A stretch of 64,000 nt of DNA, from positions 2,790,001 to 2,854,000 of the forward strand of contig NC_043009.1 in assembly GCF_006345805.1 (NCBI RefSeq), read 5' to 3'. A program made the translations under genes and the position numbers. The notes beneath the pieces are model-generated. The model was not told the DNA's origin and searched no databases. It saw only the letters and a list, made by a program, of their open reading frames with translations. The DNA is from Octopus sinensis (Eukaryota). Shown here piece after piece: positions 36,834 through 37,388 of this stretch (position 1 is its first letter; the number at the start of each line of letters is the position of its first letter).

Positions 36834-36835
<2 letters not shown>

Positions 36836-37388
36836 TACACTGATGGAGTACCAGACAGTGGCACTTGTGGTTTCTGATCTTAACTGATTAGAAGTGTTAT
36901 CATTTACATTGTTTTGTCTTGGTATAAAAGCTACAGCAAATATTCTTCTCAATACAACAGATTTGCTTGGCAGCTGTTTGACCTTAATCAATTGAGCATG
37001 TCCCTTAGTGGCTGATAATATTTGCATCTCTGATCACGAGCAGAAGTAGTGGGGAAGCATTATAGCCATGTGTTGAGAGGAATTCTTTGGGGTTTGGATA
37101 ATTCACCTTTAGAAACACGGGTGTTTCGTTCAACATCCTTAAAAACCCACCCTTATTCAGGGACCATTTGAGCGGGATGGGCTACTCGACCAAAAGAAAA
37201 TTCTCACTGGGCCCAACCGCCAAGGCCGTGCGCGGTTGATCATGATATGAGATCACAATGTCGCGCACATACGGTTGTGATGCATGTGTCTGGTGTACCC
37301 TTATCAGACGGGTAGTCATGACGGCTATACTGGGCTTCGTATATTTTACCCCAGTGTCACTTTGATGACATGTTCAGCTCCCTCACGC
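36834..37388 (+). mobile_element. Element X, longest copy (~555 bp)
   Basis: Starts GATACACTGATGGAGTACCAG and ends GCTCCCTCACGC|AATAAT. Lies between the family A copy and the C/B chimera. Confidence 0.8.

What the first reader, a model, noticed from the sequence alone, without database searches (positions are those of the whole stretch)
36834..37388. Element X: a ~555-bp non-coding, non-tRNA element behaving as an AAT-targeted non-autonomous retroposon
Seen: four copies (3091-3504, 5179-5665, 28557-29103 minus, 36834-37388). All end at the same nucleotide (..CAC[T/G]C|AATAAT), all are flanked by AAT on both sides in the same polarity as the R4 elements, and their 5' ends vary, as expected from TPRT truncation. 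The two longest stop within about 15 nt of each other. No B box, no TIRs, no real ORF, and no visible 3' similarity to families A, B or C. Inference: either a discrete parasite of an R4-type enzyme (analogous to the short internally deleted elements of R2) or the unusually long 3' UTR of a fourth family absent from this window. In two places it sits immediately behind a family A copy.
Basis: partly seen in the sequence, partly recalled or inferred. Interest (0 to 1): 0.72.

Follow-up and report, generated by a model that had tools for sequence, protein, structure and literature searches.

The report
Non-coding retroposon that targets AAT microsatellites
Element X is a real, old, roughly 555-bp non-coding repeat of octopus genomes that was copied through RNA into (AAT)n microsatellites, apparently as a free-rider on the Dong/R4-type jumping genes that use the same target, though its helper enzyme has not been identified.

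Summary
The window has exactly four X copies (555, 547, 487 and 414 bp; 84-90% identical). All share the 3' end ..CTCAC[G/T]C|AATAAT. All lie inside (AAT)n tracts in the tract's polarity. Their 5' ends fall at X positions 1, about 9-14, 72 and 139.

X has no ORF, no similarity to R4 proteins, no tRNA head, no Rfam match, no terminal inverted repeats and no similarity to the R4 copies here.

Related copies exist in Octopus bimaculoides, a TARA marine scaffold and Logan read assemblies. At DNA level they again sit beside AAT. Most near-full-length copies end within about 14 nt of the same 5' point, and the sequence beyond differs. That favours a discrete non-autonomous retroposon over a fragment of a longer LINE.

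- Family A copies are 98.3% identical, so their position just upstream of two X copies reflects later insertions, not co-mobilisation.
- The helper enzyme is inferred, not shown. No 3' tail is shared with families A, B or D.
- In one Logan contig X starts 167 nt behind a decayed R4 ORF with only AATAATAC between, so the 3'-UTR reading survives at lower probability.

Modest interest: a likely new variant of LINE-dependent retroposon.

The parts
36834..37388 (+). X copy c4, the longest copy (555 bp), used as reference
28557..29103 (-). X copy c3 (547 bp); its 5' end lies about 9-14 nt inside c4's
5179..5665 (+). X copy c2 (487 bp), 5'-truncated at X position 72
3091..3504 (+). X copy c1 (414 bp), 5'-truncated at X position 139
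36768..36833 (+). (AAT)n tract at the 5' junction of c4; it is also the 3' flank of the family A copy
37389..37482 (+). (AAT)n tract at the 3' junction of c4, followed at 37483 by a 5'-truncated R4 (B-like) copy
3010..3090 (+). Perfect (AAT)27 at the 5' junction of c1, preceded by unique sequence
3505..3845 (+). (AAT)n tract at the 3' junction of c1
5061..5178 (+). (AAT)n tract between the truncated family A copy and c2
5666..5767 (+). (AAT)n tract at the 3' junction of c2
28447..28556 (-). (AAT)n tract (read on the minus strand) at the 3' junction of c3
29105..29201 (-). (AAT)n tract (read on the minus strand) at the 5' junction of c3
37314..37353 (+). Most conserved block of X (positions 481-520): 94% identity among window copies and 87% against copies from other sources. 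Candidate recognition site for the reverse transcriptase (inferred).
37288..37335 (+). Predicted 20-pair imperfect hairpin in the 3' domain. About 91% of cells are paired and one pair shows a compensatory change. Covariation is not significant.
37354..37371 (+). Predicted 6-pair hairpin GTGTCA..TGACAT just before the 3' end. One compensatory change; not significant.
32787..36767 (+). Context: a family A Dong/R4-type element running from one AAT tract to the next. It has an RT and a C-terminal zinc knuckle plus RLE region aligning to R2 proteins, and its ORF is broken by frameshifts. It is an example of the enzyme class proposed to move X, not the demonstrated partner.
4467..5060 (+). Context: a 5'-truncated family A copy, 98.3% identical to the full copy, inserted upstream of c2

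Best explanation
X is a discrete, non-coding, non-autonomous retroposon of octopus genomes, about 555 bp long in this species. Its 5' edge varies among lineages. Shown: copies share one 3' end, are 5'-truncated to different extents, and lie inside (AAT)n microsatellites in a fixed polarity. Inferred: X RNA, probably carrying an (AAU)n tail, is copied into nicked (AAT)n DNA by target-primed reverse transcription. The enzyme would be supplied in trans by a Dong/R4-type element (RT plus restriction-like endonuclease), the class that fills the same tracts here in the same polarity and junction register. The strongly conserved block near the 3' end (positions 481-520, with two predicted hairpins) is the likely handle for that enzyme. 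How X is transcribed is unknown; it has no tRNA-type pol III promoter. The family is old: copies differ by 10-16% and it is present in several octopod sources. It is older than family A, which inserted next to it later.
For: There are four copies with an identical 3' end and graded 5' ends. All eight junctions lie in AAT arrays of matching polarity, although such arrays cover about 4.5% of the window. The 3' junction register (unique end | AAT AAT) is the same in X and in R4 families A, B and D. X has no ORF and no blastx similarity to 120 R4-type proteins, and no tRNA, Rfam family, A/B box or TIR. An independent copy in TARA scaffold L002 is a 165-nt 3' fragment sitting between (AAT)8 and (AAT)4 within unique DNA. 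O. bimaculoides antisense ORFs show AAT-derived poly-L or poly-I directly after the X 3' end (P0123, P0126) and next to a truncated 5' end (P0129). The 5' ends pile up at X positions 1-14 in c4, c3, L040 (main copy and an older fragment), L043 and L038. Beyond that point lie AAT arrays in four cases and mutually unrelated sequence in the others (P0127, P0135, P0140). Positions 481-520 are the best conserved within and between sources. Dong-R4 LINEs are abundant in octopus (51 families, about 93 Mb in O. vulgaris; PMC13282606 supplement). Dong elements are known to target (TAA)n, including in a mollusc (PMC3812793).
Against: No helper was identified. X shares no 3' sequence with families A, B or D or with any other sequence in the window. 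In L038 a decayed R4 ORF ends 167 nt upstream of X in the same orientation with only AATAATAC between. The intervening 100 nt is not significantly X-like. Two O. bimaculoides copies share about 20 nt beyond c4's 5' end (LANLWY). In the O. bimaculoides ORF sample most 5' flanks are not AAT, although gene models avoid masked simple repeats. Copies outside the window were found with a 5'-region profile, which biases the sample towards copies that reach the 5' end. Covariation support for the hairpins is not significant. No transcript or promoter evidence was obtained.
Confidence: 0.62

Rival explanations
1. X is the unusually long 3' UTR, or a sub-genomic 3' part, of an autonomous Dong/R4 family that has no intact copy in this window. 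The copies seen would then be ordinary 5'-truncated insertions of that LINE.
For: L038 has the C-terminal 240 codons of an R4 ORF (stop near nt 977 of the reverse complement). It is followed after 167 nt by X in the same orientation, with only AATAATAC in between. Two O. bimaculoides copies share sequence beyond c4's 5' end. O. vulgaris is reported to have 51 Dong-R4 families, most of them not represented here.
Against: Near-full-length copies c4, c3 and L043 and the older 5' fragment in L040 end within about 14 nt of one another directly against AAT arrays. The sequences beyond that point in P0127, P0135 and P0140/L038 are unrelated to one another. A family A 3' UTR is about 97 nt, so 555-720 nt would be exceptional. 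The arrangement R4-(AAT)n-X arises twice in the window by demonstrably separate insertions, so L038 can be the same arrangement with a shrunken AAT tract.
Confidence: 0.2
2. X is an (AAT)n-tailed non-autonomous retroposon moved by a different kind of LINE, for example an APE-type element with a microsatellite tail. Its association with AAT tracts would come from annealing of the tail to existing AAT DNA, not from an R4-type endonuclease.
For: There is no 3' similarity to any R4 copy here. Several O. bimaculoides copies have non-AAT 5' flanks. The octopus genome also carries abundant RTE, CR1 and L1-Tx1 LINEs.
Against: All five copies whose two flanks are both on hand at DNA level (c1-c4 and L002) have AAT on both sides, not only a tail. 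Polarity and junction register equal those of three R4 families. X copies are interleaved with, and in L038 and L040 fused to, R4 copies. No non-R4 LINE with an AAT tail was seen in the window, but this was not searched exhaustively.
Confidence: 0.12
3. X is not a retroposon. It is a DNA segment spread between AAT tracts by unequal recombination, gene conversion or segmental duplication.
For: AAT arrays offer long stretches of homology on both sides of every copy.
Against: One exact 3' end combined with four different 5' ends is the signature of reverse transcription from the 3' end. Recombination within the flanks would not produce it. Copies are dispersed on both strands with unrelated outer flanks, and occur in other sources at unrelated loci. 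The neighbouring A copies differ in age from the X copies, which excludes block duplication.
Confidence: 0.03

Closest known systems
Dong and other R4-clade non-LTR retrotransposons (Dong of Bombyx mori, DongAg, DongBg of the snail Biomphalaria glabrata)
   Same: Insertion into (TAA)n = (AAT)n microsatellites in one polarity (PMC3812793). In this window families A, B and D use the same tracts and show the same 3' junction register as X.
   Different: Dong elements are autonomous, about 4 kb in family A, and encode an RT with a C-terminal endonuclease region. X is about 0.55 kb, non-coding and has no sequence in common with them.
SIDEs, the short internally deleted non-autonomous derivatives of R2 and of R2/R1 hybrids in Drosophila (PMC3414825)
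   Same: Short non-coding parasites of a site-specific, restriction-like-endonuclease LINE, inserted at the LINE's own target site.
   Different: SIDEs keep the 5' ribozyme and the 3' UTR of their parent. X shares neither end with the full-length family A nor the 3' ends of B and D. No HDV-like or other ribozyme family was detected.
Classical tRNA-derived SINEs with a LINE-derived 3' tail, such as the Y family in this same window
   Same: Non-autonomous, retroposed, 5'-truncatable and a few hundred bp long.
   Different: Y has A and B boxes and a (AAGAGTAAA)n tail and is not tied to AAT. X has no pol III head and no identified LINE-derived tail, and it is confined to AAT tracts.

Membership tests
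Non-autonomous LINE-dependent retroposon (SINE in the broad sense) | Multiple dispersed copies with one constant 3' end and variable 5' truncation (the footprint of TPRT) | tested here: met
   Four window copies plus L002, L040, L041, L043 and L038
Non-autonomous LINE-dependent retroposon (SINE in the broad sense) | No coding capacity for its own reverse transcriptase | tested here: met
   Stops in all frames, longest open stretch 66 codons; no blastx hit to 120 R4 proteins
Non-autonomous LINE-dependent retroposon (SINE in the broad sense) | A defined full-length 5' end, i.e. a discrete unit rather than a LINE fragment | tested here: inconclusive
   The 5' ends pile up at positions 1-14 in six near-full-length copies, with AAT or unrelated sequence beyond. 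However, the sample is small and partly biased, two copies share a short 5' extension, and L038 is ambiguous.
Non-autonomous LINE-dependent retroposon (SINE in the broad sense) | 3' tail shared with a partner LINE | tested here: not met
   No similarity to the 3' ends of R4 families A, B, B2 or D present in the window. The other Dong-R4 families of the genome could not be examined.
Non-autonomous LINE-dependent retroposon (SINE in the broad sense) | Target-site duplications | not testable with these tools
   Both flanks are the same trinucleotide repeat, so a duplication cannot be recognised. No empty-site allele was available.
Classical SINE (pol III, derived from tRNA, 5S or 7SL) | Head derived from a small RNA gene, with an internal A box and B box | tested here: not met
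   ARAGORN finds none. Rfam finds nothing at gathering score, and only chance matches, all far below gathering score, in E-value mode. There is no B box within 2 mismatches and no A box near the 5' end, while the control SINE Y scores.
R2-type SIDE (short internally deleted LINE) | 5' and 3' ends identical to those of a parent LINE | tested here: not met
   There is no similarity to full-length family A anywhere, nor to the 3' ends of B and D. Parents absent from the window are not excluded.
R2-type SIDE (short internally deleted LINE) | 5' self-cleaving (HDV-like) ribozyme | tested here: not met
   No ribozyme family was found in the permissive Rfam scan of 36760-37420.
Dong/R4-clade element | Insertion in (TAA)n/(AAT)n in a fixed orientation | tested here: met
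   All eight window junctions and both L002 junctions
Dong/R4-clade element | Encodes an RT followed by a CCHC motif and a restriction-like endonuclease | tested here: not met
   X is non-coding. For contrast, family A has RVT_1 and aligns to R2 proteins through the C-terminal region.
3' UTR of an autonomous R4 family | Longer copies run without a target tract into an RT/RLE ORF | tested here: inconclusive
   This is not seen in the window. L038 shows an ORF stop, then 167 nt containing AATAATAC, then X.

The most novel reading that the evidence does not exclude
X is a microsatellite-specific non-autonomous retroposon that exploits restriction-like-endonuclease (Dong/R4) LINEs without sharing their 3' UTR. 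It would be recognised only through an (AAU)n tail plus its own 3' hairpin domain. The direct X-R4 fusions seen in L038 and L040 would then be template-switch products of the same reverse transcriptase. I found no description of such a partner for the R4 clade in the papers searched.
Probability: 0.3. Interest if true: 0.55.

Novelty: new variant of a known kind. Interest (0 to 1): 0.4.

Why it matters
Site-specific LINEs with a restriction-like endonuclease (R2, R4, Dong) are being studied as programmable insertion tools. What their reverse transcriptases accept as template is known mainly for R2. A natural free-rider of Dong/R4 elements that carries none of their 3' UTR would show what minimal RNA features suffice for insertion into (AAT)n. 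It would also help explain why AAT microsatellites in octopus genomes turn into dense nested clusters of repeats. For annotation, X-type units are likely to sit in the 'unknown' or 'unclassified SINE' bins of octopus repeat libraries.

Tried and rejected
- **Co-mobilisation with family A:** rejected. The two A copies are 98.3% identical, while the X copies behind them are about 89% identical and start at different X positions.
- **X as a coding remnant:** no ORF and no blastx similarity.
- **Known RNA families, ribozymes and tRNA heads:** nothing found.
- **Shared 3' tail or internal-deletion origin from A, B, B2 or D:** only chance 7-8-mers.
- **Metagenome scan with an 18-mer from X:** 35 loci, all chance matches with no further X similarity.
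- **Scans of prokaryotic genome contigs and viral contigs with a 23-mer:** no hits.
- **Full-text search for X k-mers:** no paper. No paper describing a non-autonomous partner of Dong/R4 was found.
- **O. bimaculoides loci:** these could not be fetched because the proteins are UniRef-only.
- **Covariation in the 3' hairpins:** two compensatory pairs, not above the shuffle controls.
- **The 100 nt between the AAT remnant and X in L038 as a duplicated X 5' end:** not significant (z 0.8-2.5), so this is not claimed. The partial 5' duplicate in L040 is significant (score 44-52 against a shuffle mean of about 18).
- **The Y repeat and the SINE with 184-bp modules:** ordinary tRNA-type SINEs unrelated to X.

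Full report
**What is there**

The window is AT-rich eukaryotic DNA packed with microsatellites and interspersed repeats. BLASTN of 36834-37388 against the window returns four and only four copies. They are c4 36834-37388 (+, 555 bp), c3 28557-29103 (-, 547 bp), c2 5179-5665 (+, 487 bp) and c1 3091-3504 (+, 414 bp). A profile search adds none. Pairwise identity is 84-90%.

The alignment and flanks show one common 3' end..CTCACGC or ..CTCACTC, followed at once by AATAAT. The 5' ends lie at X positions 1, about 9-14, 72 and 139. Every copy lies between two (AAT)n tracts read in the element's own orientation. Perfect AAT/ATT arrays of five or more units, merged across gaps up to 40 bp, make up about 4.5% of the window, so this placement is not chance.

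**What X is not**

- All six frames carry stops and the longest open stretch is 66 codons.
- blastx against 120 Dong/R4-type proteins and the window's own R4 ORFs gives only noise.
- ARAGORN finds no tRNA-like sequence in the window. Rfam gives nothing at gathering score, and only chance matches, all far below gathering score, in permissive mode over X.
- There is no B box within two mismatches and no A box near the 5' end, whereas the tRNA-derived SINE 'Y' in the same window scores for both.
- There are no terminal inverted repeats.
- X has no DNA similarity to any other sequence in the window, including the 3' ends of the R4 families.

**The neighbourhood**

tblastn with R4-type proteins maps at least eight R4 pieces. 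Family A runs from AAT tract to AAT tract at 32787-36767. It has an RVT_1 domain and aligns to solved R2 retrotransposon proteins from the RT into the C-terminal zinc-knuckle region. Its relatives are widespread in animals at about 45-57% identity. I read a CCHC motif and a PD..D..K-like motif directly in the ORF; that reading rests on sequence inspection. Other copies are:

- a truncated A copy at 4467-5060;
- B at 44021-46029;
- a B-like copy at 37483 to about 38860;
- a further family, D, at 46054-46545.

All lie in AAT tracts in the tract's polarity. A, B, D and X all show the same 3' junction register, unique end | AAT AAT. Dong elements are known to target (TAA)n, including in a snail (PMC3812793). 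Dong-R4 LINEs are a major component of octopus genomes, with 51 families and about 93 Mb in O. vulgaris (PMC13282606).

**Family A next to X**

The two A copies are 98.3% identical over 594 bp. The two X copies behind them are about 89% identical, start at different X positions (1 and 72), and are separated from A by AAT tracts of different length. A therefore inserted recently into the AAT tract upstream of old X copies. The adjacency is a consequence of a shared target, not of co-mobilisation.

**Relatives elsewhere**

Antisense pseudo-ORFs of X, used as protein queries, hit only Octopus bimaculoides 'uncharacterized proteins', one TARA marine scaffold and a few Logan read-assembly contigs. 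The window is therefore octopod DNA, and X is an old octopod family. Logan copies are 68-78% identical to the window copies.

- **L002 (TARA scaffold).** It carries a 165-nt 3' fragment of X between (AAT)8 and (AAT)4 in otherwise unique sequence, ending ..CTCACTC|AATAAT.
- **O. bimaculoides ORFs.** They show AAT-encoded poly-L or poly-I directly after the X 3' end (P0123, P0126) and next to a truncated 5' end (P0129).
- **L043.** It has (AAT)7 directly upstream of a near-full-length 5' end.
- **L040.** An AAT tract is followed by an older fragment of X positions 9-60 (significant: score 44-52 against a shuffle mean of about 18) and then by a complete 5' end.

**Discrete unit or 3' UTR**

The 5' ends of c4, c3, L040 (both pieces), L043 and L038 all fall within X positions 1-14. 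Beyond that point the sequences are AAT arrays in four cases. In the O. bimaculoides and Logan ORFs they are mutually unrelated (P0127 ..YILSVNHK.., P0135 ..AEENQL.., P0140 ..VDFISH..). None matches anything else in the window. That is what a defined full-length end looks like, and it is not what random truncation of a multi-kb LINE gives.

Three caveats keep the alternative open:

- The external copies were found with a profile of the 5' region, which biases the sample.
- Two O. bimaculoides copies share about 20 further nucleotides (..CIR[A/T]LANLWY).
- In L038 the last 240 codons of a decayed R4 ORF end 167 nt upstream of X, in the same orientation, with only AATAATAC between. The 100 nt that follow are not significantly X-like, and the R4 3' end there matches no family in the window.

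L038 can be read as the same R4-(AAT)n-X arrangement seen twice in the window, with a shrunken tract. I cannot prove that reading.

**Internal organisation**

Conservation is lowest over the first 40 nt and highest at positions 481-520: 94% among window copies and 87% against copies from elsewhere. RNAalifold places a 20-pair imperfect hairpin (37288-37335 in c4) and a 6-pair hairpin (37354-37371) there. About 92% of cells are paired and two pairs show compensatory changes, but this does not exceed the shuffle controls. The whole element folds only slightly better than shuffles (z -2.2). I take the 3' block as the likely enzyme-recognition region; this is inference.

**Mechanism proposed**

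- **Shown:** retroposition-type copy structure, AAT target, fixed polarity, junction register shared with R4 families, non-coding nature and old age.
- **Inferred:** X RNA ending in (AAU)n is used in trans by a Dong/R4 RT-endonuclease that nicks the (AAT)n tract and primes reverse transcription. Frequent premature termination then gives the truncated copies.
- **Unknown:** the promoter and the specific helper family.

In L038 and L040 the X copy loses its 3' end (near positions 405 and 460). It runs straight into a 5'-truncated R4 ORF in the same orientation, in L038 without any AAT at the joint. This could be target deletion at an R4 5' junction or template switching by the reverse transcriptase. 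Only the second would tie X RNA physically to an R4 enzyme.

**Comparison and novelty**

X works like a SINE or a SIDE, but it fails the defining tests of both. It has no pol III head, and it shares no ends with any R4 element on hand. It is not itself a Dong element because it is non-coding.

I found no paper describing a non-autonomous partner of Dong/R4 or a microsatellite-specific non-coding retroposon, and no paper containing X k-mers. Dfam and Repbase could not be consulted, and automated octopus repeat libraries very probably already hold X as an unclassified consensus.

I rate it a new variant of a known kind, of moderate interest to transposon biologists. Confidence is about 0.6 in the discrete AAT-specific parasite reading and about 0.2 in the long 3' UTR reading.

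Noticed in passing
window 3844-4254 (+), 55167-55584 (+), 10767-11157 (+), 24393-24772 (-), 47770-48141 (-): Family 'Y' is an ordinary tRNA-derived SINE of about 400 bp with A and B boxes and an (AAGAGTAAA)n-type tail. One copy happens to sit inside the AAT array between X c1 and the truncated A copy. The family is not AAT-specific.
   Followed up: partly
window 759-1313, 13254-13968, 53546-53898 (also 62693-62810, 19151-19290, 17704-17785): A SINE-like repeat built of internal tandem modules of about 184 bp. Some copies end ..CCGCCTT|AATAAT beside AAT arrays, but the copy ending at 13968 does not.
   Followed up: partly
window 32787-36767 and 4467-5060: Family A Dong/R4 copies are 98.3% identical, which points to recent activity. 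The full-length copy nevertheless has its coding region split into four overlapping ORFs by frameshifts (33167-33838, 34050-34724, 34633-36405, 36365-36670).
   Followed up: partly
window 46054-46545 and about 46569 onward: A 5'-truncated copy of a further R4 family ('D') ends ..GTGCAAAGGC|AATAATATAAT. It is 72% identical to the R4 piece fused behind X in Logan contig L040. Right after its decayed AAT tail, what looks like the 5' region of yet another R4-type element begins.
   Followed up: partly
L038 (reverse complement, about nt 1140-1689) and L040 (reverse complement, about nt 95-1105): In two contigs from related sequencing runs the X copy lacks its 3' end (lost near X positions 405 and 460). 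It is joined directly to a 5'-truncated R4 ORF in the same orientation. This may be target deletion during R4 insertion or template switching between R4 and X RNAs.
   Followed up: partly
window 53969-54757: A unit of about 60 nt (AATCCCCGGATTTAGACACAGTCCCAGCAACTTAGGACCGCCTTTA) recurs three times inside one long AAT array. Each occurrence is followed by ACT/AAT repeats.
   Followed up: no
window 8662-9723 and 9521-10578: Two stretches of about 1.06 kb, 859 bp apart and overlapping each other, are 98% identical. This looks like a young tandem duplication with a period of about 859 bp.
   Followed up: no
protein P0136 (UniParc UPI0006952DFD, 203 aa): The first approximately 135 residues of this protein look like a genuine host protein. 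Its last approximately 65 residues are antisense X, so an X copy appears to have been taken into a gene model or transcript.
   Followed up: no
L001 (GCA_024449705.1, contig JAANSU010039273.1): A 2.2-kb contig of an unidentified NCBI assembly is 73% identical at DNA level to family A over 2165 bp. It is the closest relative of family A found outside the window.
   Followed up: no
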